DNA of 45,450 nt, taken from contig NIVC01004451.1 of assembly GCA_002269645.1 (NCBI GenBank), forward strand, positions 1 to 45,450, in the 5' to 3' direction. Below, in pieces: positions 1 through 41,000 of this stretch. A program made the translations under genes and the position numbers. The stretch's first letter is position 1. Each line of letters opens with the position of its first letter. Below the pieces are notes generated by a model. It did not search any database and had not been told where the DNA came from. It saw only the letters and a list, made by a program, of their open reading frames with translations. The stretch is from Macrostomum lignano (lineage: Eukaryota).

Positions 1-1302
1 GGCATGAATGCCTTCCTCTGTGCCCCTCCTTTGGATATTTATATCAAAGGAGAGGCGGCGAAGAGCACCCGGCTTCTTCTGGATGCTGGGGTGGCCTTCA
101 AGAAAGTGCGGGCCTTTAAGAAGCGGTCGCTTATCCCGCACTCTGACCTCTGCCTCAAGGCTCTCGAGGAGTGTGGCGGGCTCAACATCCTCACGGACTC
201 GATCCCAGCCACCCTTCTCCTGAGCCAAAGGTATAAGGTCACCATTCAGCCCGACACGAGGCGAGTGACAGCTGGAGCGACTCTGAAGTCCACTGTTACA
301 CTGACGGCTCTATGAGGCATGGTCTTTCAGGCTTCGGAGCTTGCGTCTTCTTCAAGGGAGAAGTGGTGTGGAGCTACTCCCAGCACACTGGGCTCAACTC
401 CAGTGTTTTTCAGAGCGAGGTGCTTGCCATCAGCTCCTGCGCGGCAGAGCTGCGCCGAAGGCAGCTTAGCGGCCGGAAATTTATTTTTCACTCTGACAGC
501 CAAGCAGCCCTTCGGGCCCTCTGCCGCAGCACCGCCAGCTCCAGGTCCGTCCTGGACTGCAACACCCAGCTCAACGGGCTTGCGCTAGGCAACCAGGTGG
601 AGCTCAGATGGATCCCGGGCCACGCCGGCTTCCTCGGCAACGAGCGCGCTGACCTGCTGGCCAAGGCTGGCTCCGCCGGCGCGCTATTGGGGCCGGGCCC
701 GGGTGCCCCCATCCCCGCCTCGGTGATCAATTCCCGCGTTAAGCGCTGGACTGACTCCGAGCATCTCCGCAGGTGGCACGACACCCGGAATTGTAGGCAA
801 TCCCGTGCTGCCGTCCCTGTCCCTCTCCTCTCCTGCGTAGAGCCCTCCTCAGGCTCAACCGCAGAGACCTCAGAGCAGTTAGCATGGCCCTCTCCGGGCA
901 TGGCTGCTTCTCTCGCCACCGCTTCCTTCAGGGCCAAGTACCCGAGGAGCGGTGCCCCTTCTGCCGCTCAGGCAGTGAAAACGCCGAGCATTTTATCTGC
1001 CACTGCCCGGTTTTCACCAGGGCCAGGCTTACTCACCTCGGGCCAAACCCGGTTCTCTCCGACGTTTGCAGGCCCGAGAGCATCCCGCTGCTCGCCCGGT
1101 ACCTCAGGGACACCGGACGAGCTGACTTCTTCCCCACCGTCGGTGAGGAGGACCGCGCTGCAGGCGAGACCGACGGGTCCCCCTGAGCGACACCACTTCA
1201 ACGGAAGTCGTTGGTCGCCAGGGGCTAGCGGAATGGGCGGTCCCCTCCGCCTCCTCGCTGCATCCGCCGGACGCCCCCTGCAGCTAAGTCAAGTAAGTCA
1301 AG
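1..1302 (+). mobile_element. Non-LTR retrotransposon (I-group, LOA/Nimb-like) 3' portion: RT connection, RNase H, C-terminal CCHC, 3' UTR and AAGT-type tail
   Basis: Joined frames give PPLDIYIKGEA...HCYTDGS...SVFQSEVLAI...HSDSQAAL...WIPGHAGFLGNERADLLAK (non-LTR RNase H) and ALSGHG...CPFC...ENAEHFICHCP (CCHC). Two 1-bp frameshifts near 250 and 825. Tail taagtcaagtaagtcaag at 1285-1302. The 5' end lies outside the window. Confidence 0.9.
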
Positions 1303-1605
1303 AGAGATGTATTAAGAGTGGATTAGGGTGGAAGTCGTCGTAGTAGCAGAAGGGGTGATGGAAATGACCAGACTGGAAAGAATATGCGGAGTATGGAAGT
1401 GATAACTGCTAAGTGCATGGAACCTCAAATTCTACTGCATATCCTCCGCCCCATTTATAAGTAGTAAACTGCGCTCATAATTTTAAAGAGCAGCTTTTCG
1501 CAGAATCATTCAGCAAATGATCTGAATCTGTTTTTCGAAAAAAGTTATTCGATTGCAAGGGAAATCTTTTCTATTTGAATCGAGCCTTTCTCAAGTGCTC
1601 AACTA

Positions 1606-5256: not shown

Positions 5257-6530
5257 CGACTCCAGATTACAGGCCACATCATCCGCGCCTTCGATGACTC
5301 CAGCAGGCTGACAACATCATCCTCGCCACCGATGACTCCAGATGGCTGAAAACATCATCCGCGCCTTCGATGACTCCAGCAGGCTGACAACATCATCCTC
5401 GCATGCGATGACTCTACTTACTTACTTTCTACTGACGGGGGCGCAGGCGCCGCGAATAGGCCGCGAGGCCCCTATCGCAACTCCAAGGTAAAAGAGCACA
5501 AGGATTAACCTTGGGGTGCGCCCAGTCCCCGCCAGTATAGTCGGCAGGTTCGCAGTGGAGGCATCGGCGACTCTCATCCGGCCGGAGTCCCGGACGAAGG
5601 CGCGAAGGTCACGGATATTGTCCGGGGTGGTCAGCTCGTCCATCCGCTGGGGGTGGCCGAGGTATTTGTGCCGCGCCTTGTTGAAGTAAGGGCAGAAAGT
5701 GACGTGATGCTCCGCGGTCTCCTCTCTTATGCCACAGAAAGGACAGGTGGGAGGGCAACCGGTTTGCAACGAGATATGTCTCTGGAAGAATCCATGGCCG
5801 GTTAGGGCCATGCACATCTCCCTGAGGTCGGTTCTGTTAAGCGAGATCAGATAGTCAGAGACTTTCCTGTTCAGGTTAGGCATGGCAGAGCGGGTTTGCC
5901 TGTACTCGGTGCAGCTGTTCCAGTGGAGCTGGTGCTGCTGATGGAGCCACCTGTTGATATGGCGGGTGACTTGCGACCTGGGAGTGGGTAGCCTCATCAG
6001 ACGGTGGTTGCCGTCTGGGTTGCTGCCCTCCTTGGCGAGAGAGTCCGCGAGCTCGTTGCCCAGGATGTTGCTGTGACCGGGTGTCCAGATAATTCTAATC
6101 CTGTTAAGGACTGAGAGGGATTGCACACTGCGGTGGCATTGATATACTGTAGCAGCGGAGATATTCTCAGTGGTTAAGGCCTTAATAGCGGCTTGGCTAT
6201 CAGTGTAAAAGTTAATATTGAAGTTATTAATATTCGCCTGGAGCAGATGCTGGGCGCATGATTCTAGCAGGCTGACAACATCATCCGCGCCTTCGATGAC
6301 TCCAGCAGGCTGACAACATCATCCGTGTCCCCGATGACTCCAGCTGGCTGAAAACATCATCCGCGCCTTCGATGACTCCAGCAGGCTGACATCATCCTCG
6401 CATGCGATGACTCCAGCAGGCTGACAACATCATCCTCGCATGCGATGACCCCGGCAGGCTGACAACATCATCCTCGCATGCGATGACTCCAGCAGGTTGA
6501 CAATATCATCCTCGCATGCGACTCCAACTG
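5257..6530. repeat. 38-bp minisatellite interrupted by a LINE (5257-5416 and 6258-6530)
   Basis: Unit gatgactccagcaggctgacaacatcatccgcgccttc on both sides of the insertion. Confidence 0.9.
5417..6257 (-). mobile_element. 5'-truncated non-LTR retrotransposon (RNase H + CCHC), same clade as the element at 1-1302
   Basis: [12 protein letters not shown]...[21 protein letters not shown] and MALTGHG...CPFC...[11 protein letters not shown]. (AAGT)n tail near 5417-5427. 9-bp TSD atgactcta (5408-5416) / atgattcta (6258-6266). Confidence 0.92.
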
Positions 6531-7951: not shown

Positions 7952-10900
7952 ATGCCGGAGCAATCAGAGGCCGCGCAGCAGCAGGCGGACACCCTGTCCG
8001 ATTCGTATGATCGCCATCTGGACGACTGGATGGCAACGGTTTTGAGCGTCATCGACAAGCTGAGAGACCGCAAGGCCCGGCCAGATGTTGAGCGAATCTT
8101 CGTCATGGTAAAATATTGCTATTTATTGTGTATATGAACTCTGTTGCTTTTTATATTGACTCTAGCATTATTGCTTTACGCATGAGAGTAACTATCTAAA
8201 ATTTTCAACTGAAGAAGCCTCGTCATCTGATTAGCATTGATTCGGATCAGATGTAGATTAGCGTGTTACTTTTATCAGCAGAATTTTTCTGATTGCCGGT
8301 CGGCTCAGGCAGGTGCGGGCCAACGATCGGCTTGGTTAGCTTTGTCGCCCAGCACCACCAGGGCATGAGAAACTCAGTTGAGTCATTTTTTCAGTCGGAC
8401 ACTCATGGGAAACTCATTTTCTCAGTGGGACACTCATGGGAAACTCATTTTATCAGTCGGACACTCATGGGAAACTCATTTTCTCAGTCGGACACTCACC
8501 AGAAACTCATTTTCTCAGTCGGACACTCACCAGAAACTCATTTTCTCAGTCGGATACTCATCGGAAACTCATTTTCTCATACACTCATGGGAAACTCATT
8601 TTCTCAGTCGGACACTCATGGGAAACTCATTTTCTCAGTCGGATACTCATCGGAAACTCGTTTTCTCAGTCGGACACTCATGGGAAACTCATTTTCTCAG
8701 TCGGATACTCATCGGAAACTCGTTTTCTCAGTCGGACACTCACCAGAAACTCATTTTCTCAGTCGGACACTCATGGGAAACTCATTTTCTCAATCGGATA
8801 CTCATCGGAAATTCGTTTCTCAATCGGATGGATACTCATCGGAAACTTGTTTTCTCTGTCAATCACTTGAAATTCATTTTCGGCGCCTGATGTTCGCTAG
8901 AACGCTCGCAGGAGCAGAGGTTGGTGCGAGCCTCATAGTCCGAAGGAAACGAGCTGCGTAGGCAGTCAACCAACTGTCTATGGCCAAGAGTCACCCAATC
9001 CGAATTCGCTGCCATAAAGTGGAAGCTGACTCATCATTGCTAGTGGCAACTCTTTCCCTATAGATTATTTCCCAGAATCATTTCAACCCCGAAGCGCTCA
9101 ATTCGCAGTTCGAACCGCCGCCCCGCTTCACCAGGCCAACCGTCAGCGGCAGCAGAATCCCGGAGGCGCCGAGCTCACCCGGGATGCCGTGGCCAGCATC
9201 CTGCAGCGCCTTGTCGAACAGCGCCAGGTGATGCGGGTGGAGTACAAGGGCTCCGTGTCCTACCGAAACGCCTCCAGCTGGCACCGCCGGAAGGAGCTGG
9301 CCAGCGACCGGAACAGCCCGGACACCACCCAGCGGGTGCTCGCCGCGGCCAAGAGCCTCCCGGACGGTGCCACCTTCACCGTCCAGATTCTGCACGCTCG
9401 GATGCTGCTGCTGCAGCAGGTGCGGTGCCGCTGATTGACTTATGGGGCTTAATCCCTGCACATCCCCATTGTCATGCCGGTCTCTGCAGGCTTAATCCCT
9501 GCACATCCACATTGTCATGCCGGTCTCTGCAGGCTTAATCCCTGCACATCCACATTGTCATGCCGGTCTCTGCAGGCTTAATCCCTGCACATCCCCATTG
9601 TCATGCCGGTCTCTGCAGGCTTAATCCCTGCACATCCCCATTGTCATGCCGGTCTCTGCAGACTTAATCCCTGCACATCCCCATTGTCATGCCGGTCTCT
9701 GCAGGCTTAATCCCTGCACATCCCCATTGTCATGCCGGTCTCTGCAGGCTTAATCCCTGCACATCCCCATTGTCATGCCGGTCTCTGCAACAGTCCTTAG
9801 CTGCGATGTTTTCCATTGAACGAAGTAAGGAATTTTCCAGTGTCGCGACTCTGGAAAATTAAGAAAACGCGCGGGCTGAGGTGTTGCATTATGGCTACTA
9901 TGTAACCGTAATAATAACCGTAATCCTCGGTGTTTGCATCGCGCTTTTGGGGCGCCATATTTTGTGGCCTGTGTGGCGCGTCCGCGGCTTTTTCAAATTA
10001 TTCCAATAGGGATTAATAGGGAGAGAGTTTGGCTGATCGACCTCATTAACTCCCTCCCCCTCTCTTCCTCTCATCCCAATCTCCCCGCTGCCCTTCTTCC
10101 TCTCCCCTCTCCCTCTCCTTATCCCCTTCCCTCTTCTCCCTATCTCCCTCTCCCTCTTCTCCCTATCTCCCTCTCCCTCTTCTCCTTATCCCCTTCCCTC
10201 TTCTCCCTATCTCCCTCTCCATCTTCTCCCTATTCCCCTCTCCCTCTTCTCCCCATCTCCCTCTCCCTCTTCTCCCTATCTCCCTCTCCCTCTTCTCTCT
10301 ATTCCCCTCTCCCTCTTCTCCCTATCTCCCTCTCCCTCTTCTCCCTATCTCGCTCTCCCTCTTTTCCCTATCTCCCTCTCCCTCTTCTCCCCATCTCCCT
10401 CTCCCTCTTCTCCCCATCTCCCTCTCCCTCTTCTCCCCATCTCCCTCTCCCTCTTCTCCCCATCTCCCTCTCCCTCTTCTCCCCATCTCCCTCTCCCTCT
10501 TCTCCCCATCTCCCTCTCCCTCTTCTCCCCATCTCCCTCTCCCTCTTCTCCCCATCTCCCTCTCCCTCCATATTGTCCCCGCCCTTTCGCTTTTTCCCGC
10601 ACACCTTGGCCGTCCACTTTTTTCTCTATCTCGCATTTCGTCCCATCTGCATTCCGCCAGCATGCCGAAGTCCCCCCAATGTCGACCACCGCCCTGTCCG
10701 AGGCGCTGGAGCGGGAGGCCGCCGCCGGCCGGCTGTTCCGTCTCGGGCCCAGCCGCTTCCAGCTCGACTTGGACGGCTCGCGGCGCCAGGCGGCCCTGCG
10801 CCGCCGCAAGGAGCGGGTGCAGCTCGCCAAACGGCGCCGAGCCGCCGCCGCTGCCGCCGTGGCCGCCGTGGCCGCTGCAGTCGTTGACGATGCTGACAAC

Positions 10901-13302
10901 GACAACGGCGATGACGGCGACGGCGACGAATTTGTCGGGCCGCCGGCCGTCAAGCGAGCAGCGGGTGCCGGCTCGACGCCGCTGGACCTGCGGCTGTGCG
11001 GCGCTCCGCGTCGACGCCGCCGTCGGAAGAAGTCGCCGGTGGTGGCCTCTCGCGCCCCCTCCGCCTCCTCATCCTCCATGGACGCGGCCGCCTCGGCCAG
11101 CGGTGGCGGCGGCGGCGGCGGCGGCGTCTCGGCGAATTCACCGGACCTGTGCGACTTCTGCCAGTCGCCTCCAAGTGCGAATCGCATGGGCGTCCCCGAG
11201 CGGATGCTGCGCTGCCGGGACTGCGCGCACAAGGTGGGGTTGGGATCGGCACTGAATGGGATTTGGGGGATGGGATTCAGTGTGGGATGGGATGTGGGAT
11301 TTAAATTTTGATGGGTGGGAATATAGTCGGGGATGGAGACTGGGACAAGGAGTGAATAGTAATGGGATCTTTAATGCGGATGTTGAAAAGACGAGTTAGG
11401 ATGTCGAATCGCGGGCCGCTTTGTCGAGTTGGGTTGACTTGTGATAGCCGTGGCGATTGGGATCAGAGCCGTGGCCCCAAGTTGAGATCAGCCGTGGGGA
11501 TTGGGATCAGAGCCGTGGGGATTGGGATCAGAGCCGTGGGGATTGGGATCAGAGCCGTGGGGATCGGGATCAGAGCCGTGGGGATTGGGATCAGAGCCGT
11601 GGGGATTGGAATCAGAGCCATGGTGATTGGAATCAGAGCCATGGTGATTGGGATCAGAGCCGTGGGGATTGGGATCAGAGCCGTGGGGATTGGGATCAGA
11701 GCCGTGGGGATTGGGATCAGAGCCGTGGCGATTGGGATCAGAGCCGTTATGAGTGAGATCAGAGCCGTTATGAGTGGGATCAGAGCCATGGTGATTTGGA
11801 TCAGAGCCGTGGGGATTGGGATCAGAGCCGTGGGGATTGGGATCAGAGCCGCTATGAGTGAGATCAGAGCCGCTATGAGTGGGATCAGAGCCGCTATGAG
11901 TGGGATTAGAGCCGCTATGAGTGGGATCAGAGCCATGGCGATTGGGATCAGCCCTGCCACGCAGCACCCGCCCGCCCCAGGCGCACCCCAGCTGCATGCT
12001 GTATGGGCCGGAGCTGGCCGCCAGGGCCTGCCAGTCGCCGTGGCAGTGCTCCGAGTGCAAGACCTGCTGCGTGTGCTCAGGCAGCGGCGACCCCGAGCTC
12101 ATCCTGATCTGCGACGCCTGCGACAAAGGCTACCACGTCAGCTGCCACCGGCCCCGCGTCACCGAGCGACCAGCCAGCGACGCCAAGTGGGTGTGCAGCC
12201 GCTGCCGGGAGGAGGAGCGAGTGGACGGGTCTGTTGGTTCTATGGGATCCTTTATGTTTTTATTTATGGCTTATGGCTTTTGGAATCCCTGATTTATGGC
12301 TTTTGGAATTACAGATTTATGGCTTTTGGAGTCCCTGATTTATGGCTTTCGGGATCCCGGATTTATGGTTTGAGATTCCTGATTTATGGGCTTCGGAATC
12401 CCTGATTTATGGGCTTCGGAATCCCTGATTTATGGGCTTCGGAATCCCTGATTTATGGCTTTTGGGATCCATGATTTATGGCTTTTGGAATCCCTGATTT
12501 ATGGCTTTCGGGATCCCTGATTTATGGTTTATGAGATTCCTGATTTATGGGCTTCGGAATCCCTGATTTATGGCTTTTGGAATCCTTGATTTATGGGCTT
12601 TTGGAATCCCTGATTTATGGCTTTCGGGATCCCTGATTTATGGCTTTCGGGATCCCTGATTTATGGTTTATGAGATTCCTGATTTATGGGCTTCGGAATC
12701 CCAGATTTATGGCTCTTGGGATCCCTGATTTATGGGCTTTTGGGATCCCTGATTTATGGTTTATGAGATTCCTGATTTATGGGCTTCGGAATCCTAGATT
12801 TATGGCTCTTGGGATCCCTGATTTATGGGCTTTTGGGATCCCTGATTTATGGGCTTTCGGGATCCCTGATTTATGGCTCTTGGGATCCCTGATTTATGGC
12901 TCTTGGGGTCCCTGATTTATGGCTCTTGGGGTCCCTGATTTATGGCTTTGGGATCCGTGATTTATGGGTTTTCAACTTCAGGCTACAATGATCCATAATC
13001 CTCACCAATTATGATTCCTCAGCTCCGGTCAGCAGCCACCGCCGCAGGAGTCGCAGGCGCAGCTGGCGGGCGACGCCAGCCTGTGGAGCATCGCGCAGGT
13101 CCGCAGCTGGCTGGACGGCGAAGGCTTCCCGCTGGCTGCGCAGGCCTGCGTTGAGCAGGAGATCGACGGCGCCTCGCTGATGCTGATGAAGCGGATGGAC
13201 GTCCTGACGGGCTTGGGCCTGAAGCTGGGGCCTGCGGTCAAGGTGTTCGACAAGATCAGCCGGCTGCAGGGCCGGTGCCGCACCCTGCTGCAGGTCAAGT
13301 GA
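7952..13302 (+). CDS. SAMD1: SAMD1-like chromatin protein: winged helix (SAMD1/KAT6 WH1), WH2/H15-like segment, double PHD finger, SAM domain; ~513 aa
   Basis: Exons 7952-8107, 9135-9419, 10661-11233, 11981-12228, 13023-13302; all GT-AG and phase-consistent (0,0,0,2). Motifs LRDRKARPDVERI...VMRVEYKGSVSYRN (SAMD1/KAT6 WH); CDFC...CRDC...HPSC...WQCSECKTC..C...CDACDKGYH..C...W.CSRC (DPF); WSIAQVRSWL...EQEIDGASLMLMKRMDVLTGLGLKLGPAVK (SAM). The last few codons could instead splice to an exon at 13546. The symbol denotes family resemblance, not proven orthology. Confidence 0.9.
8370..8860. repeat. 31-bp intronic minisatellite, ~15 copies
   Basis: Unit ggacactcatgggaaactcattttctcagtc. Confidence 0.92.
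9446..9789. repeat. 43-bp intronic minisatellite, 8 near-identical copies
   Basis: Unit ggcttaatccctgcacatccccattgtcatgccggtctctgca. Confidence 0.95.
10055..10570. repeat. CT-rich ~23-bp intronic minisatellite
   Basis: Unit tctccctctccctcttctcccca. Confidence 0.9.
11452..11950. repeat. 21-bp intronic minisatellite, ~24 copies
   Basis: Unit gggattgggatcagagccgtg. Confidence 0.93.
12240..12970. repeat. ~22-bp intronic minisatellite
   Basis: Unit approximately ggatccctgatttatggctttt, with variants. Confidence 0.92.
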
Positions 13303-13337
13303 GTCACCGCGGTTCCTGGTGTCCGGTGACAGTCAGC

Positions 13338-13525
13338 CAGATCCCATTGATCCCCCAATCGCTTAGATCCCATTGATCCCAATCGCTTAGATCCCAATTA
13401 CTTGGATCCCATTGATCCCAATCGCTTAGATCCCATTGATCCCCCAATCACTTGGATCCCATTGATCCCCCAATCTCTTAAATCCCATTGATCCCCTAAT
13501 CTTTTAGATCCCATTGATCCCATTC
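13338..13525. repeat. ~26-bp minisatellite after the SAM exon
   Basis: Unit approximately gatcccattgatcccccaatcgctta. Confidence 0.85.
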
Positions 13526-16076
13526 TCTAAGGCCTTAGTTGTCAGGTCTGTGCATCCCTTAAGTCCAATTCCCATTCAATAATTTGGAGCCTCCTGAAAA
13601 TATAACTTCAGGCAATGCGTCAGTGAAAGCACCTGAAGTGACTCACCTGCCGCATGCTATCCTAACGGCAACTCCTGGCGCTTGAAGCCAGCCCTCGATG
13701 CAACAAGGCAGGCTGCCCGAGTCTCAGTCGAAAGCAACAGAAATTATTCGAGTCATTTTTTGTAATTCTCTCTACTCAATCAATCAGTTAAAATACTTGG
13801 ATGAATGCTCAATGCTTATTTCTCGAGCCCAGGCCGGCCGCACCAATCAGTCGGTTTGAATTTTCTCTTGCAATCAGACATGATAGTTGGATGAAAACTA
13901 TTAATGCCACTCCTGTGTTTGCTTATAGTTTTTATTCATTTTTGCCAATATATTTGCAAATTTCTTTGCACACTACTGTAAGTAGGTTAGTACGCATTCG
14001 GGATCTTTTTGTTTGTAGATTATCTAAAAATATTATCTTCAGTTACTCAGTGTATTTATTTGTATTAATAATTCTTCATACTTACGAAATGTCTGCTGCT
14101 CTGCTCTGCTTTCCCTTCAGCACTCGGTTGCAGAAAAAAATTGATTCCAGCTTTCGCAATTCGTTTGTTGCTGAAAAATAGCTCAGCTTATTATTCCGTA
14201 ATCAAATGGATAGTGCACCATTCCGTGGCTATTTTGAACTTTGTTGGCCTCGTTAAAATACCGTGACTGTTTAAAAATATTAATAAACATCAGCTGACTA
14301 ACTAATGCTTTGATGTACATGTACATTGTCATGTATGCACTAACAATTACCACTACCAGGCGCGTCTCATGTCCTAGTTACAGCAATACTGCAAATGTCA
14401 CTTTGCCCAATGCGCTTTGATGTTAATTATACAGAATGTTAACTTATTTTCAATAAAATGTGCCCATTTTCATCCATAATCAACTGTTTAGTCTTTGTAA
14501 AACATTTCTCTGGCGCTCGTAAAAGAGCTTTTTATCGTAACAATTGATTGACAATTTGAAATTATTTAAATGAATTGACAATTTGGAATCGTTTTCGGCT
14601 ATACAGTAGCATTTTGCTGTCAAGCTGTCAAAAGTGGCTATCAATGCCCAAGTGTTTCAAACGCTGAAAAATTTATTAGGTAAGAATTTACTTTTAATGC
14701 AATGCAGTGCTAAGTAGAAATGTTTTTCTTTAAATAATCTAGAATTGCGTACATATTTAAATTAAAAATTCGTAAAAAAAACATGACCCGACATACAATT
14801 TTTTATGGGCTTGTTTCCTATCAAAGACACTAGTAGTCAGAAAGACAACTTCCGTGTTTTGATTTTTTTAGAAAGATAAGCTAGTTTTTCAGAAAAGTTA
14901 AAGCAGAAGTAAGTTTCTTAAGCTGATTAATTTCCTTTTCCTTTTTGTACATACTTAATTTTTTAATGTAAAGCGCCGGATTCTTTTTATTTTCTTTTTC
15001 CTCGGTTTTTTATTAGTTTAAACAAATCAATAACTATTACACCAATAATTATGCAAAATAAAAAAGCTTTAGCAAGTGCTTATAATCAATAAGTTTTCAT
15101 TTTTACATAATTTTGATCTAAACTAAAGATAAAATTGTTATCAAGAAAACTTTATTTTTTAGTTTCACTTTCTCAGCTGATTATTCTGAGAGCAACTCCT
15201 ACTCAAGGCTCTAAAGTTATAACTTTCATAACTTAAGTAGTCCTTGTGATTATTATACACAAATCAAATTAGAAATATAATGCCTTGATTGCAACTCTGA
15301 CATTGACTGTGTTTATATCGAATAAAACAAAGCTGTTATAGAAAATATAAAGCTGTAATTTTTCTTGAAACATTTTATTATCATATTCAAACGACATAAA
15401 TAGTGATCTCTTTATCTATGATGGTGACAAGAAATGGGATTTTTATTGGATTTTCTGTCAATGTGTATTTTTTGTGCTGCAAGGCCACCAGAATGTTCAA
15501 AGAAGAATTAAAGTAACTTTTTACGCGCGTATAAGTAAAAAATGATAAAATTTAGTTTACCCTGATGACTAATAGGAAAGCCAGCGCCTTCATAGCTAAG
15601 CAAATATTCAGCTATCAAAAATTATGTTTTGCTTTAAGTCTTATTTATTAAAACACATGCACATTTTAGCTTTTACACTTGTAGAATTCAGCTTTTAGAT
15701 TTAGACTCTGATTCCTCAGAGCTATGCAATTTTGAGATGTTTCAGTTGATGTAGCTGCTACAATTTTTCAGTTTATTTTAGGAATAATTTATCTGGTTAG
15801 GATTTCTACTTTATTTAATCATGTAGCTTTTATAAGCAACTAATTTGTTGTTACTAATTGCTACAATTCTATCTATGTGCAATGGATTAACATATTGTTT
15901 AATCAGTTTTGAAAAAAATATTTTGCTTCTTTAAAATGGGCAGCTTGTTCGGAAAAAGCATGAAACATTTTATCCCATATGGGCATTGTGTTTATTGCAG
16001 CTGAATAATTATTTGCCCACCAATTTAAACTCGCGTGCCACGGCCACAACCTACGACTTGCCCGCAGCCCGCGTCA

Positions 16077-17429
16077 ATGCAGGCCGCCTACTTGAAGCCA
16101 GCCGTCCTGCGCCACCACGAGGTGCCGGGCCACTTCAAGGAGGTCTTCATCCTATCGGGCTACCGGCCAGTCAGCTCGGTGGCGCAGTGCGTCCGCAGCA
16201 TCTTCAGCTGGAATAACGAGACCCTCAATGTCTGGAGCCACCTGCTGGGCTCGCTGGCCTTCCTGTCCATGGCCGTCGGCGCCGTCAGCGAGTTCGGCGT
16301 CTCGGACCCGGCCGTCTGGCCGCTGTACCTCTTCCTGCTCGCCTCGGTGCTGTACCCGCTGGCCTCCGCGCTGGCGCACATGTTCAACGTGCTGTCCAGG
16401 GAGGCCCGGGACGTTTGCTTCTTCATTGATTACGCGGCCATCGCCTTCTACGGGCACTGCGCCACCTGCGCCTATTCGGCCTACTCTCTGCCCGGCCACA
16501 TGATGGCGCCCGCGTCTCAGCTGCTGCTTCTGGCCGCCTCCACCGCCACCGCCATCTGGGGAGTCTGGACCTCCTGTCGGACCAGGTTCATGCCCAGGTG
16601 CGCTCCGAATTTGAGAGCTCCGACATCAAATTCAGCTCTTAGATATCAAACTCCCACCTGTAATCACCAACCTCCAATCCGTAAGAATCAAGATCCCATC
16701 AAAAAGAATCAAGATCCCATCAAAAAGAATCAAGATACCATCAAAAAGAATCAAGATCCCATCAAAAAGAGTTGAGATCCCGTCCGTAAGAATCAATATC
16801 CCATCCGTAACAACCGATATCCCATCCCTAAGAACGGAGATCCCATCCGTAAGAATCGAGATCCCATCCCAAAGAACCGAGATCCCATCCGTAAGAACCG
16901 AGATCCCACCTGTACCGAATAGCCAACACTTTACAAGATATAATCCCAAAAATATCCCCCCAGATCCCTGAGCCGGCAGGTGCTCCGCCTGTCGGGTTTC
17001 GTGCTCGCCTGCCTCATCGCCAACCTGCCGGTGCTCGCCCGCCTGGCCGCTGCGGCCGCCAACTCCGACGAGGCGTCGCTGCCGCACTGGCGCCGCCAGC
17101 TGTGGCTGGTGCTGGCGATGGCCTTCCTCTACCTGACGCACCTGCCGGAGCGCCTCTGGCCCGGCGCATTCGACATCGTCGGGCACTCGCACCAGCTGTT
17201 CCACCTGGCCGGCTGCATGGGCACCGCCGACCAGATCGCCGCGCTGCGCTTCGACCTTCGGGATCGTCGGCCGTTGCTGACCTCGCCGCCTCCCTGGCTG
17301 CCCATGCTGGTCAGCGCCGGCCTGGTGGCCGCCTGCGCCTGCGGCATCGTCCTGCGCTACAGCCTGCGGGTGCGGCGGCTGGCGGCCGCAGGCGGCGGCG
17401 GTGGCTGCGGGAAGAAACGCTCCGATTGA
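16077..17429 (+). CDS. PAQR family 7TM protein, membrane progestin receptor (class II)-like; ~328 aa
   Basis: Exons 16077-16597 and 16964-17429 (phase 2 join gives MPR|SLSRQV). Motifs [53 protein letters not shown] possible upstream acceptor at ~16067 leaves the start uncertain. Confidence 0.92.
16685..16905. repeat. 21-bp intronic minisatellite
   Basis: Units aagaatcaagatcccatcaaa / aagaaccgagatcccatccgt. Confidence 0.85.
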
Positions 17430-26807: not shown

Positions 26808-37399
<10,592 letters not shown>

Positions 37400-38093: not shown

Positions 38094-41000
38094 GTTTAGA
38101 ATGATACTGTGTAATCTTGATTAAACTGCTCTCGCCCTTTGGCTTCAGCATTCATCATCTCTTACTCAACTGCTGTTGCTTATTGACTAAGAAATATACT
38201 CGATAAGCTGCTGCTGCGTCTGTAAATCCAACAGGTAGGTTATGGGCTCAGCATGATTCCATTGTGCATAAGCGGTAGCTGATTCAGAAGCCTTGCTCCG
38301 ACGGAGAATAAGCTTGTTCTCGACACAAACTGTCCGAGGAAATGGCGGATGGTGTCTGAATGTGTCCTGGTGTCCTTGAATATGTCCTGATGTCCTTGAA
38401 TATGTCCTGATGTCCTTGAATATGTCCTGGTGTCCTTGAATATGTCCTGATGTCCTTGAATATGTCCTGATGTCCTTGAATATGTCCTGGTGTCCTTGAA
38501 TATGTCCTGATGTCCTTGAATGTGTCCTGATGTCCACGAATGTGTCCTGGTGTCTTTGAATGTGTCCTGGTGTCCTTGAATGTGTCCTGGTGTCCTTGAA
38601 TATGTCCTGATGTCCTTGAATGTGTCCTGATGTCCACGAATGTGTCCTGGTGTCTTTGAATGTGTCCTGGTGTCCTTGAATGTGTCCTGATGTCCTTGAA
38701 TGTGTCCTGATGTCTTTGAATATGTCCTGATGTCCTTGAATGTGTCCTGGTGTCCTTGAATGTGTCCTGGTGTCCTTGAATGTGTCCTGGTATCCTTGAA
38801 TATGTCCTGGTGTCCACGAATGTGTCCTGGTGTCTTTGAATGTGTCCTGATGTCCTTGAACATGTCCTGATGTCTTTGAATGTGTCCTGATTTCCTTGAA
38901 TGTGTCCTGGTGTCCTTGAATGTGTCCTGGTGTCCTTGAATGTGTCCTGGTGTCTTTGAATGTGTCCTGGTGTCCTTGACTATGTCCTGATGTCCTTGAA
39001 TGTGTCCTGATGTCCTTGAATGTGTCCTGATGTCCTTGAATATGTCCTGATGTCCTTGAATGTGTCCTGGTGTCCTTGAATGTGTCCTGGTGTCCTTGAA
39101 TGTGCCCTGGTGTCCTTGAATATGTCCTGGTGTCTTTGAATGTGTCCTGGTGTCCTTGAATGTGTGCTGATGTCCTTGAATGTGTCCTGATGTCCTTGAA
39201 TATGTCCTGATGTCCTTGAATGTGTCCTGGTGTCCTTGAATGTGTCCTGGTGTCCTTGAATGTGTCCTGATGTCCTTGAATGTGTCCTGGTGTCCTTGAA
39301 TATGTCCTGATGTCCTTGAATATGTCCTGATGTCCTTGAATATGTCCTGGTGTCCTTGAATATGTCCTGATGTCCTTGAATGTGTCCTGATGTCCACGAA
39401 TGTGTCCTGGTGTCTTTGAATGTGTCCTGGTGTCCTTGAATGTGTCCTGGTGTCCTTGAATATGTCCTGGTGTCGACGAATGTGTCCTGGTGTCTTTGAA
39501 TGTGTCCTGGTGTCTTTGAATGTGTCCTGGTGTCTTTGAATGTGTCCTGGTGTCCTTGAATGTGTCCTGGTGTCCTTGAATGTGTCCTGGTGTCCTTGAA
39601 TATGTCCTGGTGTCGACGAATGTGTCCTGGTGTCTTTGAATGTGTCCTGATGTCCTTGAATATGTCCTGATGTCCTTGAATGTGTCCTGATGTCCTTGAA
39701 TGTGTCCTGGTGTCCTTGAATATGTCCTGATGTCCTTGAATGTGTCCTGATGTCCTTGAATGTGTCCTGATTTCCTTGAATATGTCCTGATGTCCTTGAA
39801 TATGTCCTGATGTCCTTGAATATGTCCTGGTGTCCTTGAATATGTCCTGGTGTCCTTGAACATGTCCTGATGTCCTTGAATATGTCCTGATGTCCTTGAA
39901 TATGTCCTGGTGTCCTTGAATATGTCCTGATGTCCTTGAATGTGTCCTGGTGTCCTTTGGTGGGAAGCGGAAGTGGAGTGACTATACCTGGAAGATTCAG
40001 GGTTTTGGGGGAGTCATCGACGGTTGATCATAGCTCGTATCCGCTATATGAAGGAGCTGACCGACAAACTGGTCTCTATCAACGGACCTGACAGTGAAGA
40101 GGACCAAGTGGTCATGCTGCTCAGCAGTCTGCCCGAGAACTACTCTACCTTGGTTACTAGGCTACAGGTGATTCACCAAGCACGCATCAACGAGGAGCAA
40201 AAGCGGAGTCAATTAGATGAGCGAGGGTTTGGAGGTGGAGAATCTGCACTGAAGGTCCAAAAAGGCCAAGGGCTGCCACGTCGTGCAGTCAAATGTTTTG
40301 CTTGAGGAAAAATTGGTCACGTGGCCCATCGAGCTGTCAAGACAAGTCATTCAGGAGGATTTAAAAAGACCTTCAAGGACCAGCTGCCAAAACAGCCGAA
40401 ACCTCACTTGATGATGACGCATCTAAAAGCTGCAACGAGACATTCTTTGTGTCTCCCATCAAGACCAGATCTGACATATCCAACTGGATAATTTGACTCG
40501 GATCGTCCTGCCACACTACATACTCTAGAGAGCTACTAGTCAACTACAACCTGTTTGCGCGACCTGAACGGGTCAGCCTAGGTGATGGTTGAACAGTCGC
40601 AGCGGCCTGCGGCAGCGGTCAAGTAAAACTCAGTATGCTCCTGCCACATGACAAACAAGCGTTTCAAGACTGCTGCGACGGATGTACTTCTAGTGCCTCG
40701 GCTGTCGTGCACGTGTTTAGTGTACGAGCTAGCAAAGGATAAAGGCGACATATTGCTGTCGATTCACCACAAGGTGCCACAAGTGCAACTTTATGGCACC
40801 AGCGTCTTGGTCCTGTCAGCGAGCACCAACAAAATAAAATGAGCAAAAGCCAACTAGTGAGTAGCATCTGCAAGTTGCAGACTGCATAAGTAGACAGCTT
40901 GGAACTTGAGCTCAAGATAACAGAACCGACACCACGTCAACAAGAACAGGAACAGTTAGTGTCGACAGAAACTGATCAGAAGCGATATCCTCAATGTGGG

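What the first reader, a model, noticed from the sequence alone, without database searches (positions are those of the whole stretch)
7952..13302. KAT6-type reader module (WH1-WH2-double PHD) fused to a SAM domain instead of a MYST acetyltransferase
Seen: a phase-consistent ~513 aa ORF with RKARP...YKGSVSYRN winged helix, a second helix-wing segment (LSEALEREAAAGRLFRLGPSRFQL), a complete double PHD finger and a C-terminal SAM domain. Established: KAT6A/B have WH1-WH2-DPF followed by MYST; vertebrate SAMD1 has WH1 plus SAM but no DPF; WH1 binds unmethylated CpG, DPFs read acylated H3 and SAM domains can polymerise. Inference: this is a catalysis-free, possibly polymerising CpG/H3 reader that may be an intermediate or ancestral link between the KAT6 and SAMD1 architectures. 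I cannot tell how well such invertebrate proteins are already described.
Basis: partly seen in the sequence, partly recalled or inferred. Interest (0 to 1): 0.75.

Follow-up and report, generated by a model that had tools for sequence, protein, structure and literature searches.

The report
Flatworm SAMD1 relative keeping double PHD
This Macrostomum lignano gene encodes a non-enzymatic chromatin-binding protein that looks like the invertebrate form of vertebrate SAMD1, still carrying a second winged helix and a histone-reading double PHD finger; it belongs to a widespread, mis-named and apparently undescribed animal gene family, so SAMD1 probably began with a KAT6-like reader module and later lost part of it.

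Summary
A GT-AG spliced gene on the + strand, starting at ATG 7952, encodes WH1, WH2, a double PHD finger (DPF) and a SAM domain. One correction: the annotated models splice at 13298 (CAA|GTGAGT) to a sixth exon at 13612-13636, which gives 520 aa rather than 513.

The window is Macrostomum lignano DNA. GenBank already holds the protein as a "hypothetical protein".

The domain order resembles KAT6 and there is no MYST domain. But WH1 (119 vs 56 bits) and SAM (55.6 vs 31.6 bits or less) are clearly SAMD1-type. The DPF is a canonical DPF, only marginally closest to KAT6A.

The architecture is not a flatworm peculiarity. At least 88 cluster representatives carry all four domains, from corals, molluscs, annelids, arthropods, echinoderms and hemichordates. 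Automatic annotation calls them "KAT6-like", "atherin" or "SAMD13".

No separate DPF-less SAMD1 turned up in invertebrates. The "small helical domain" of vertebrate SAMD1 aligns with WH2 (hhalign probability 96%).

Best reading: this is the ancestral-type SAMD1, a polymerising reader of CpG DNA and the H3 tail with no catalytic domain. Vertebrates later lost the DPF.

I found no paper describing this. Interest is moderate.

The parts
7952..8107 (+). Exon 1 (aa 1-52). It encodes a long N-terminal helix and the first WH1 helix with the RKARPD motif (R38, R40, K41, R43).
   Evidence: ATG at 7952 and donor ATG|GTAAAA. Identical to P0001 residues 1-52 except Y19S. WH1 coding starts near 8027.
8108..9134 (+). 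Intron 1, carrying a 31-bp minisatellite at 8383-8860 (15.5 copies).
   Evidence: GT...AG ends. Tandem Repeats Finder. GenBank contig NIVC01001733.1 lacks window 8015-8362.
9135..9419 (+). Exon 2 (aa 53-147). It encodes the rest of WH1 (helices 2-3 and the beta-hairpin VEYKGSVSYRN, to about 9275) and the first half of WH2 (from about 9312).
   Evidence: Acceptor ...caccag|GCCAAC, in phase with exon 1. P0001 has the same junction, FVM|ANRQ. Pfam SAMD1_WH covers residues 29-97.
9420..10660 (+). Intron 2, carrying two minisatellites: a 43-bp unit at 9446-9789 and a 23-bp unit at 10062-10568.
10661..11233 (+). Exon 3 (aa 148-338). It encodes WH2 helix 3 and wing (to about 10768), a basic, Ala-rich helix (aa 187-224), a disordered linker (aa 226-303) and the first half of PHD1 (from about 11144).
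   Evidence: Splice sites. AlphaFold models. WH2 block conserved in the family.
11234..11980 (+). Intron 3, carrying a 21-bp minisatellite at 11446-11951.
11981..12228 (+). Exon 4 (aa 339-421, ending in phase 2). It encodes the rest of PHD1 and all of PHD2; the DPF ends near 12211.
   Evidence: Matches the KAT6A DPF at E 6e-24. All 16 Zn ligands are present. Foldseek TM-score 0.67-0.83 to DPF3b, DPF2, MOZ and MORF.
12229..13022 (+). Intron 4, carrying a 23-bp minisatellite at 12271-12972 (30.5 copies).
13023..13298 (+). Exon 5 (aa 421-513). It encodes the SAM domain, at about 13072-13275. If intron 5 is retained, TGA at 13300-13302 ends a 513-aa product.
   Evidence: Matches the SAMD1 SAM domain (6luk) at E 4.7e-14. 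Foldseek TM-score 0.91, rmsd 0.9 Å, 48% identity. Donor CAA|GTGAGT.
13612..13636 (+). Coding part of exon 6: completes codon K513, then QCVSEST and a TGA stop.
   Evidence: Acceptor ...aacttcag|GCAATG. Same C-terminus as GenBank models P0001 and P0002.

Best explanation
**What it is.** The gene encodes the Macrostomum lignano member of an old animal family whose vertebrate representative is SAMD1 (atherin). The family is present in at least Cnidaria and Bilateria. The flatworm protein keeps what looks like the ancestral architecture: WH1, WH2, a basic linker, a double PHD finger and a SAM domain. It has no catalytic domain.

**How it most likely works.** It is probably a multivalent chromatin reader and scaffold.
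- WH1 inserts the end of its first helix (R40-K41) into a CpG-containing major groove and its Y89-K90 hairpin into the adjacent minor groove, as SAMD1 does.
- WH2, a winged helix of the linker-histone type, adds non-specific binding to DNA or nucleosomes, as in MOZ/MORF.
- The DPF docks the histone H3 N-terminal tail. A1 and R2 are anchored by D383/D386 and W408. There is a K14-acyl pocket with F313, M344 and W359.
- The SAM domain self-associates head-to-tail and can bind other SAM proteins. This multiplies the weak contacts and recruits partners.

By analogy with SAMD1, which works with L3MBTL3 and KDM1A, the outcome is probably repressive.

**Shown versus inferred.**
- Shown here: gene structure, domain identities, conservation of the contact residues, purifying selection and taxonomic spread.
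- Inferred: the binding specificities, polymerisation, repression, and the scenario in which vertebrate SAMD1 lost the DPF and let WH2 decay.
For: **Gene model and identity**
- The gene model and its 99% match to GenBank protein P0001.
- Pfam and PDB domain assignments.

**SAMD1-type WH1 and SAM**
- Family WH1 profile: SAMD1 6lui at E 2.5e-33 (119 bits) against KAT6A 7y43 at E 3.8e-14 (56 bits).
- SAM domain: SAMD1 at 55.6 bits against 31.6 bits or less for Ph, Scm, PHC3 and L3MBTL3.
- AlphaFold models: mean pLDDT 87.7 for the N-terminal 192 residues and 78.7 for full-length P0001, with four folded modules.
- Foldseek: SAMD1 WH TM-score 0.81 at 46% identity; SAMD1 SAM 0.91 at 48% identity; DPF3b, DPF2, MOZ and MORF 0.67-0.83.

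**Functional residues**
- 8 of 9 SAMD1 DNA-contact residues are kept. Residue list from PMC8115922.
- 13 of 14 SAM interface residues are identical and the fourteenth is L to V.
- The DPF keeps its Zn ligands, the H3R2 aspartate pair and W, F and M of the acyl-lysine pocket. Residue list from PMC3902925.

**Selection and spread**
- dN/dS is 0.11 against the paralogous locus.
- 88 of 208 collected proteins carry WH1-WH2-DPF-SAM. All 46 WH1-SAM proteins are most similar to vertebrate SAMD1 sequences or are themselves named vertebrate SAMD1.
- Taxa include a coral, molluscs, an annelid, a nemertean, a bryozoan, flatworms, chelicerates, crustaceans, insects, a tardigrade, echinoderms and a hemichordate.

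**Link to vertebrate SAMD1**
- The vertebrate SAMD1 'small helical domain' aligns with the family's WH2 at hhalign probability 96.3%, E 2e-9.

**Single transcript and plausibility**
- A Logan contig of 2346 nt holds one uninterrupted 564-codon ORF with all four domains.
- M. lignano retains DNMT1 and DNMT3 and has low-level 5mC (PMC11292947), so reading unmethylated CpG is meaningful there.
Against: - No binding, polymerisation or expression data exist for this protein or for any invertebrate member.
- One pocket residue differs: MOZ I260 is S362 here, where the family has I or M. MOZ S210 is D312, as in DPF2/3. Acyl-lysine preference may therefore differ.
- SAMD1 R56 is V51 here, and H in most of the family.
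- The AT-hook-like KRGRPP motif that the family conserves is degenerate in M. lignano.
- No domain phylogenies with KAT6, Enok, DPF1-3 or PHF10 could be built, because the searches returned no KAT6 sequences. 'DPF lost in vertebrates' rests on parsimony and on finding no DPF-less invertebrate paralogue among the best 150 representatives.
- RNA evidence for the M. lignano transcript is indirect. It comes only from the GenBank models.
Confidence: 0.78

Rival explanations
1. It is a genuine KAT6 (MOZ/MORF/Enok) orthologue whose MYST exons were missed, lie further downstream, or belong to another isoform.
For: The WH1-WH2-DPF order is the N-terminal order of KAT6. The DPF's best PDB match is KAT6A. 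Automatic annotation names many family members 'KAT6A/B-like'.
Against: - Pfam finds no MOZ_SAS hit in the protein.
- The reading frame ends just after the SAM domain in the GenBank models. Dozens of full-length family members from many phyla end the same way.
- The next gene downstream is a PAQR/HlyIII gene, both here and at the paralogous locus.
- WH1 scores twice as high against SAMD1 as against KAT6A.
- I did not scan the whole window for MYST-like coding sequence.
Confidence: 0.02
2. The architecture is an artefact: two neighbouring genes, one WH-DPF and one SAM-only, were joined by the reader's phase-consistent splicing.
For: The SAM domain sits on its own exon after a 794-bp repeat-filled intron. 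The in-window evidence for the join is only phase and GT-AG ends.
Against: - GenBank models P0001 and P0002 make the same join.
- 88 cluster representatives have all four domains in one protein.
- A 2346-nt contig from a sequencing-run assembly holds one uninterrupted ORF with all four domains.
- The phase-2 junction GG|C is exact.
Confidence: 0.02
3. The window copy is a decaying duplicate. M. lignano carries several near-identical copies after genome duplication, and this one may have no function of its own.
For: At least two loci exist, L001 (this window) and L002, both followed by a PAQR gene. A third, frameshifted UniRef sequence, P0003, also exists. The GenBank assembly of this very locus lacks 348 bp, including part of exon 1.
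Against: - In the window all six exons are intact with canonical splice sites.
- There are 15 synonymous and 5 non-synonymous differences from L002, giving dN/dS 0.11.
- None of the five replacements touches a contact residue.
Confidence: 0.06
4. The family arose by domain capture rather than by descent from a shared cassette. On this view a WH1-SAM proto-SAMD1 acquired WH2-DPF exons from a KAT6 gene, or KAT6 acquired them from this family. The four-domain form would then be derived, and the vertebrate WH1-SAM form closer to the original.
For: WH1 and SAM are SAMD1-type while the DPF is nominally closest to KAT6A. Mixed affinities of this kind are what shuffling would produce.
Against: - The four-domain form is present in a coral and across all three bilaterian super-clades, while DPF-less forms are confined to vertebrates or are fragments or isoforms.
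- Vertebrate SAMD1 still carries a vestige of WH2.
- A shark paralogue has an intact WH2 but no DPF. This points to stepwise loss, not gain.
Confidence: 0.12

Closest known systems
Vertebrate SAMD1 (atherin): an unmethylated-CpG-island binder with an N-terminal atypical winged helix and a C-terminal polymerising SAM domain (Stielow et al. 2021, PMC8115922)
   Same: - WH1 is the best sequence and structure match: 119 bits, TM-score 0.81, 46% identity.
- 8 of 9 DNA-contact residues are kept.
- The SAM domain is the best match: 55.6 bits, TM-score 0.91, 48% identity.
- 13 of 14 ML/EH interface residues are identical.
- The overall order is WH at the N-terminus and SAM at the C-terminus.
- The SAMD1 'small helical domain' aligns with this protein's WH2.

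   Different: - This protein has an intact second winged helix and a complete double PHD finger between WH1 and SAM.
- It lacks the Pro/Ala-rich disordered region of mammalian SAMD1.
- R56 of SAMD1 is V51 here.
KAT6A/KAT6B (MOZ/MORF) and Drosophila Enok: MYST acetyltransferases with an N-terminal WH1-WH2-DPF module (Weber et al. 2022, PMC9881136; Becht et al. 2023, PMC9908889)
   Same: - Same order of three reader domains: a CpG-type WH1, a linker-histone-like WH2 and a DPF.
- The DPF's top PDB match is KAT6A (127 bits for the family profile).
- The H3R2 and H3A1 anchoring residues are conserved.

   Different: - There is no MYST domain, and a SAM domain sits in its place.
- WH1 is only 26-27% identical to KAT6A WH1, against 46% to SAMD1.
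- The K14ac-pocket residue S210 is Asp, as in DPF2/3.
DPF1-3 (BAF45b/c/d) and PHF10: the non-catalytic double-PHD-finger readers of the BAF and PBAF complexes
   Same: - A DPF used as a pure reader with no enzyme attached.
- DPF3 (119 bits) and DPF2 (115 bits) score nearly as well as KAT6A.
- The Asp at the pocket rim matches DPF3b D263.

   Different: Pfam finds none of their other domains (Requiem and C2H2 in DPF1-3, SAY in PHF10) in this protein (the domain make-up of those proteins is from general knowledge). Conversely, they lack the SAMD1-type WH1 and a SAM domain.
Shark 'SAMD13 isoform X2' (Stegostoma tigrinum XP_059504145.1, P0141)
   Same: It has a SAMD1-type WH1, an intact WH2 (44 bits on the family's WH2 model) and a SAMD1-type SAM domain.
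   Different: It has no DPF. It looks like an intermediate stage between the four-domain form and SAMD1.

Membership tests
SAMD1 (atherin) family | N-terminal atypical winged helix (Pfam SAMD1_WH, PF21524) above the curated cut-off | tested here: met
   63.6 bits against a cut-off of 24.5, residues 29-97. The family profile scores 119 bits against 6lui. Foldseek TM-score 0.81.
SAMD1 (atherin) family | CpG-contacting residues R43, R45, K46, R48, R56, Y87, K88, S92 and R94 of human SAMD1 | tested here: met
   8 of 9 are identical (R38, R40, K41, R43, Y89, K90, S94, R96). R56 is V51 here, and H in most family members.
SAMD1 (atherin) family | C-terminal SAM domain of the SAMD1 type with a conserved ML/EH polymerisation interface | tested here: met
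   SAMD1 SAM scores 55.6 bits against 31.6 bits or less for other SAM families. 13 of 14 interface residues are identical. TM-score 0.91, rmsd 0.9 Å. The generic Pfam SAM_1 model alone is below its cut-off, 16.9 against 23 bits.
SAMD1 (atherin) family | Central 'small helical domain' (Pfam SAMD1_SHD, PF24971) | tested here: met
   It is present here as a complete WH2. hhalign of the vertebrate SHD region against the family's WH2 block gives probability 96.3%, E 2e-9. The Saccoglossus member hits both SAMD1_SHD and Linker_histone, each below its cut-off.
SAMD1 (atherin) family | Binding to unmethylated CpG DNA; interaction with L3MBTL3 and KDM1A; repressor activity | not testable with these tools
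   Needs EMSA or ITC, pull-downs and in vivo assays.
KAT6 / MYST acetyltransferases | MYST catalytic domain (Pfam MOZ_SAS) C-terminal to the DPF | tested here: not met
   No such hit even at E up to 1. The protein ends after the SAM domain.
KAT6 / MYST acetyltransferases | N-terminal WH1-WH2-DPF module in that order | tested here: met
KAT6 / MYST acetyltransferases | WH1 closer to KAT6 WH1 than to other winged helices of this subgroup | tested here: not met
   KAT6A scores 56 bits with 26-27% identity; SAMD1 scores 119 bits with 46% identity.
Double PHD finger (DPF) readers: KAT6A/B, DPF1-3, PHF10 | Two PHD fingers packed as one unit with all 16 Zn ligands | tested here: met
   The ligands are C311, C314, C332, C335, H340, C343, C361, C364, C367, C370, C382, C385, H390, C393, C410 and C413; 13 of the 16 are invariant in the 29-sequence alignment A3 and the other three (H340, C410, C413) nearly invariant. 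TM-score 0.67-0.83 to DPF3b, DPF2, MOZ and MORF.
Double PHD finger (DPF) readers: KAT6A/B, DPF1-3, PHF10 | H3 N-terminus anchoring: the Asp pair for H3R2 and the Pro/Trp pocket for H3A1 | tested here: met
   D383, D386, P402 and W408 correspond to MOZ D282, D285, P301 and W305.
Double PHD finger (DPF) readers: KAT6A/B, DPF1-3, PHF10 | Hydrophobic acyl-lysine (H3K14ac/cr) pocket: MOZ S210, F211, N235, L242, W257, C259, I260 | tested here: inconclusive
   F313, M344, W359 and C361 are kept. S210 is D312, as in DPF3b. N235 is H337. I260 is S362, where the family has I or M. Whether the pocket still takes acyl-lysine needs peptide binding assays.
Linker-histone (H15) type winged helix, for WH2 | Three-helix bundle plus beta-hairpin with sequence similarity to the H1/H5 globular domain | tested here: inconclusive
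   The fold is predicted with confidence. Foldseek gives H1x TM-score 0.65 and H1 0.66, though the aligned query region was not reported. Sequence similarity is weak: H1.0 at E 0.037 and HP1BP3 at E 0.11. Pfam Linker_histone reaches E 8.5e-4, below its cut-off, in the Saccoglossus member only.

The most novel reading that the evidence does not exclude
WH1-WH2-DPF would be an ancient reader cassette that combines CpG, nucleosome and H3-tail recognition. Before cnidarians and bilaterians split, it was already coupled to two different outputs: a MYST acetyltransferase (KAT6) and a polymerising SAM domain (proto-SAMD1).

On this reading vertebrate SAMD1 is a reduced descendant. It lost the DPF and let WH2 decay into the 'small helical domain'; a shark paralogue shows the intermediate state.

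In most invertebrates the two paralogues would then read the same chromatin signature, with opposite consequences: one writes acetylation, the other scaffolds repression.
Probability: 0.45. Interest if true: 0.6.

Novelty: new variant of a known kind. Interest (0 to 1): 0.5.

Why it matters
**For SAMD1 and KAT6 biology.**
- SAMD1 and KAT6A/B are studied as separate CpG-island binders that happen to share a winged helix.
- This family suggests they share a whole three-domain reader cassette.
- It also suggests SAMD1 once read the histone H3 tail directly, an ability vertebrates gave up.
- That gives an evolutionary explanation for the unexplained 'small helical domain' of SAMD1.
- It predicts that invertebrate SAMD1 integrates DNA and histone signals on one polypeptide.

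**As an experimental system.** M. lignano is tractable, with RNAi, transgenesis and regeneration assays. It could be used to ask what a DPF adds to a polymerising CpG reader.

**For annotation.** Members of the family currently carry names such as 'histone acetyltransferase KAT6B-like', 'polyhomeotic-like' and 'SAMD13'. These wrongly imply enzymatic activity or Polycomb membership.

**Limits.** The gene itself is already deposited. No experiment supports the proposed functions.

Tried and rejected
**Searches and jobs that did not deliver**
1. **Domain trees against KAT6, Enok, DPF1-3 and PHF10.** None of the three capped homologue searches returned a KAT6, DPF or PHF10 sequence.
   - single sequence.
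   - family profile.
   - DPF-only profile, which scored just 199 short candidates.
   - The representative search's best 150 hits also stopped at SAMD1-type proteins.
   - I used profile-versus-PDB bit scores as a substitute and did not type human sequences from memory.
2. **The spliced 520-aa window protein.** The 99%-identical GenBank protein P0001 was used instead.

**Readings considered and rejected**
3. **Other exon-2 acceptors.** AGs end at 9063, 9075 and 9108. All three are out of phase with the exon-1 donor. Only 9134|9135 fits, and it matches P0001.
It is kept only as a possible intron-retention end, because the annotated models use exon 6.
5. **The odd N-terminus of P0002 (MPEQSEPRSSRR...).** I checked whether it marks an alternative isoform. 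It coincides with a 348-bp gap in that assembly relative to the window, so I treat it as an assembly or annotation artefact.

**Literature**
6. Seven full-text searches and six papers were read for any description of an invertebrate WH-DPF-SAM protein or a SAMD1-KAT6 common origin beyond WH1. Nothing was found.

Full report
**1. What is in the sequence**

The region lies in eukaryotic DNA whose exons are G+C-rich (59-74%) and whose introns are filled with minisatellites. Joined at canonical GT-AG sites, they are in phase: 7952-8107, 9135-9419, 10661-11233, 11981-12228 and 13023-13302, together 513 codons plus TGA.

Three other acceptor AGs upstream of exon 2 are out of phase. Only 9134|9135 fits.

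A search of about 5.8 billion proteins returned two GenBank proteins of the free-living flatworm Macrostomum lignano at 99% identity. They are BOX15_Mlig008857g1 (P0001, 518 aa) and BOX15_Mlig000786g1 (P0002, 489 aa).

- Both use exactly these junctions.
They splice at CAA|GTGAGT (13298/13299) to a short sixth exon (13612-13636) that adds QCVSEST.
- The window protein is therefore most likely 520 aa.

P0002 is identical to the window from exon 2 onward. Its contig (NIVC01001733.1, locus L001) is 98-99.6% identical to the window but lacks window 8015-8362. That explains P0002's aberrant N-terminus.

**2. Domains**

*Sequence searches*

- Pfam finds SAMD1_WH (E 1.9e-17), two PHD fingers and a sub-threshold SAM_1. 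It finds no MOZ_SAS.
- Against PDB sequences, the DPF is closest to KAT6A (E 6e-24). DPF2, KAT6B, DPF3 and PHF10 follow.
- The N-terminal winged helix and the SAM domain are both closest to SAMD1/atherin.

*Family alignment*

An alignment with 31 homologues shows five conserved blocks:

- WH1, with RKARPD ... YKGSxSYRN.
- A second block, G.S..eIe..L ... L..AL.REV.AGRL.KL.NGNY.L.
- A basic, AT-hook-like KRGRPPxKRK stretch.
- The DPF.
- The SAM domain.

*Structure prediction*

| Model | Result |
|---|---|
| Residues 1-192 | mean pLDDT 87.7 |
| WH1 | helices 3-39, 46-58, 68-80; strands 84-89, 92-97 |
| WH2 | helices 114-125, 137-147, 156-168; strands 172-176, 179-182 |
| Full-length paralogue P0001 | mean pLDDT 78.7 |

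The full-length model adds a long basic helix (187-224), a disordered stretch (226-303), a confident DPF and a confident SAM domain.

*Foldseek matches*

- WH1 matches the SAMD1 winged helix (TM-score 0.81, 46% identity) better than KAT6A WH1 (0.74-0.76, 26-27% identity).
- The DPF matches DPF3b, DPF2, MOZ and MORF at 0.67-0.83.
- The SAM domain matches SAMD1 SAM at 0.91, with rmsd 0.9 Å.
- Linker-histone globular domains match at about 0.65, presumably on WH2. The tool does not report which part of the query aligned.

**3. Which family?**

Profiles built from the family give a clear answer for two of the domains.

| Domain | Best match | Next best |
|---|---|---|
| WH1 | SAMD1, 119 bits | KAT6A, 56 bits; ZMYND11, 16 bits |
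| SAM (window sequence) | SAMD1, 55.6 bits | polyhomeotic, 31.6 bits; Scm, PHC3, L3MBTL3 lower |
| DPF | KAT6A, 127 bits | KAT6B 120, DPF3 119, DPF2 115, PHF10 101, MLL3/4 71 |

The DPF is a canonical DPF, but its affinity to KAT6 is marginal.

WH2 has only weak sequence similarity to linker-histone domains (H1.0 at E 0.037, HP1BP3 at E 0.11). This fits the H15-like nature reported for KAT6 WH2 (PMC9881136; PMC9908889).

**4. Distribution**

An exhaustive HMMER scan of 1.84 billion cluster representatives found 589 proteins at E 1e-30 or better.

I built HMMs for the four blocks and classified the 208 proteins collected:

| Architecture | Number of proteins |
|---|---|
| WH1-WH2-DPF-SAM | 88 |
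| WH1-DPF-SAM | 11 |
| WH1-WH2-SAM | 21 |
| WH1-SAM | 46 |

Named four-domain members come from many phyla:

- a coral (Montipora)
- molluscs
- an annelid (Owenia)
- a nemertean
- a bryozoan
- free-living and parasitic flatworms
- horseshoe crabs, ticks, mites and a sea spider
- krill, an amphipod and a springtail
- a locust, beetles and a mayfly
- a tardigrade
- sea urchins, starfish and an acorn worm

Their automatic names are inconsistent: 'KAT6A/B-like', 'atherin', 'SAMD13', 'polyhomeotic-like' and 'Scm-like'.

All 46 WH1-SAM proteins are either named vertebrate SAMD1 sequences or most similar to them. The DPF-less invertebrate entries are fragments, or proteins most similar to four-domain members. 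One beetle isoform stops inside PHD1.

So no separate DPF-less SAMD1 turned up in invertebrates among the proteins I could see. The four-domain gene is the counterpart of vertebrate SAMD1.

**5. Further links to vertebrate SAMD1**

- **The small helical domain.** Vertebrate SAMD1 carries a Pfam 'small helical domain' (PF24971). I picked that region by BLAST to a snake SAMD1, independently of my WH2 model. It aligns with the family's WH2 block at hhalign probability 96.3%, E 2e-9, over 52 columns. The acorn-worm WH2 cross-hits both Linker_histone and SAMD1_SHD.
- **A shark intermediate.** A zebra-shark protein annotated 'SAMD13 isoform X2' has WH1, an intact WH2 and a SAMD1-type SAM domain but no DPF.

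Together these favour stepwise reduction in vertebrates: the DPF was lost and WH2 decayed. They argue against a gain of WH2-DPF in invertebrates.

**6. Is the window copy functional?**

- All exons are intact.
- A paralogous locus (L002) encodes P0001 and, like this one, is followed by a PAQR/HlyIII gene.
- Against L002 the coding sequence differs at 15 synonymous and 5 non-synonymous sites, plus one in-frame 6-nt indel in a poly-Gly run.
- That gives dN/dS 0.11.
- None of the replacements hits a contact residue.
- In another species, all four domains lie in one uninterrupted 564-codon ORF on a 2346-nt contig from a sequencing-run assembly.
- Direct RNA evidence for the M. lignano junctions was not available to me.

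**7. Likely mechanism**

This section is inference from solved homologues.

*WH1*

- Of the SAMD1 residues that contact CpG DNA (PMC8115922), R43, R45, K46, R48, Y87, K88, S92 and R94 are all conserved here.
- Only R56 differs (V51).
- The same eight are nearly invariant in the family.

*SAM*

- Thirteen of the 14 residues at the SAMD1 SAM-SAM interface are identical.
- The fourteenth is a conservative change, L to V.

*DPF*

- All Zn ligands are kept.
- The H3R2-binding Asp pair and the H3A1 pocket are kept.
- F, M/L and W of the K14-acyl pocket are kept.
- MOZ S210 is Asp, as in DPF3b. MOZ I260 is Ser in M. lignano only.

*Context in the organism*

M. lignano retains DNMT1 and DNMT3 and has low-level 5mC (PMC11292947).

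*Proposed model*

The most likely function is a SAM-polymerised, non-catalytic reader that combines four contacts:

- CpG DNA through WH1.
- Nucleosomal or linker DNA through WH2.
- The H3 tail through the DPF.
- Recruitment of partners through SAM.

By analogy with SAMD1 the outcome is probably repressive. Specificities and outcome are untested.

**8. Novelty**

- The gene and its relatives are already in public databases.
- I found no paper describing the WH1-WH2-DPF-SAM family, SAMD1's loss of a DPF, or the identity of the small helical domain with WH2.
- A 2021 review still counts only six DPF proteins, and its evolutionary scheme covers only the PHF10, DPF1-3 and MOZ/MORF lineages (PMC8538644).
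- I rate it a new, undescribed variant of a known kind, of moderate interest to chromatin specialists.
- The missing domain phylogenies are the main gap.

Noticed in passing
window 8383-8860, 9446-9789, 10062-10568, 11446-11951, 12271-12972: Each of the first four introns of the gene is largely filled by its own unrelated minisatellite, with units of 31, 43, 23, 21 and 23 bp and 8-30 copies. Tandem Repeats Finder returned 40 rows at score 200 or more across the window, some describing the same array at different periods. Examples are 16-mer x 86 at 26916-28299, 20-mer x 95 at 28698-30607 and 20-mer x 80 at 38357-39957. Copy numbers differ between the window and the GenBank contig.
   Followed up: partly
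window 8015-8362 versus L001 (NIVC01001733.1): The GenBank assembly of this locus lacks 348 bp that the window has. The missing piece includes the 3' end of exon 1, which encodes the RKARPD DNA-contact motif. This coincides with the truncated, frame-shifted N-terminus of the deposited protein P0002, so it looks like an assembly or annotation artefact, or possibly a deletion allele.
   Followed up: partly
window 13298-13636: There are two possible 3' ends. Read-through reaches TGA at 13300-13302 (513 aa). Splicing at CAA|GTGAGT to exon 6 at 13612 gives 520 aa, as in the GenBank models. A third sequence, P0003, ends in ...QLKYLDECSMLISRAQAGRTNQSV, which matches an ORF at 13698-13859, so a further alternative 3' exon may exist.
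   Followed up: partly
L002 (NIVC01003246.1) compared with window 7952-17429: A second, 99%-identical copy of the gene lies on another contig. It is also followed by a PAQR/HlyIII gene, but it spans 9.6 kb instead of 5.7 kb. Its exons are separated by larger distances than in the window. This fits the known recent genome duplication of M. lignano.
   Followed up: partly
window 16035-16775 and 16980-17429 (+): The downstream neighbour is a two-exon PAQR / haemolysin-III family gene (Pfam HlyIII, E 3.6e-22 and 5.8e-13). According to the GenBank contig, the upstream neighbour on the minus strand is a pantothenate kinase (Fumble) gene.
   Followed up: partly
window 312-1343 (+) and 5422-6126 (-): Two ORFs have RNase H similarity (E 1.7e-7 and 1.8e-4). 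They are probably retroelement remnants within or beside the upstream gene.
   Followed up: no
P0063 residues 156-240 and other vertebrate SAMD1 proteins (not in the window): The Pfam 'SAMD1 small helical domain' of vertebrate SAMD1 aligns with helices 2-3 and the wing of the invertebrate WH2 (hhalign probability 96.3%, E 2e-9). It therefore looks like a vestigial second winged helix.
   Followed up: yes
P0141 (Stegostoma tigrinum XP_059504145.1): A shark protein annotated 'SAMD13 isoform X2' has a SAMD1-type WH1, an intact WH2 and a SAMD1-type SAM domain but no DPF. This hints that SAMD13 may be a reduced paralogue of SAMD1.
   Followed up: partly
window about 10920-11050 (protein residues about 235-275): The family conserves an AT-hook-like KRGRPPxKRK motif between WH2 and the DPF. 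M. lignano has lost the GRP core (KRAAGAG...) and instead has a poly-Arg run (PRRRRRRKKSP) after a lineage-specific Ala-rich helix.
   Followed up: no
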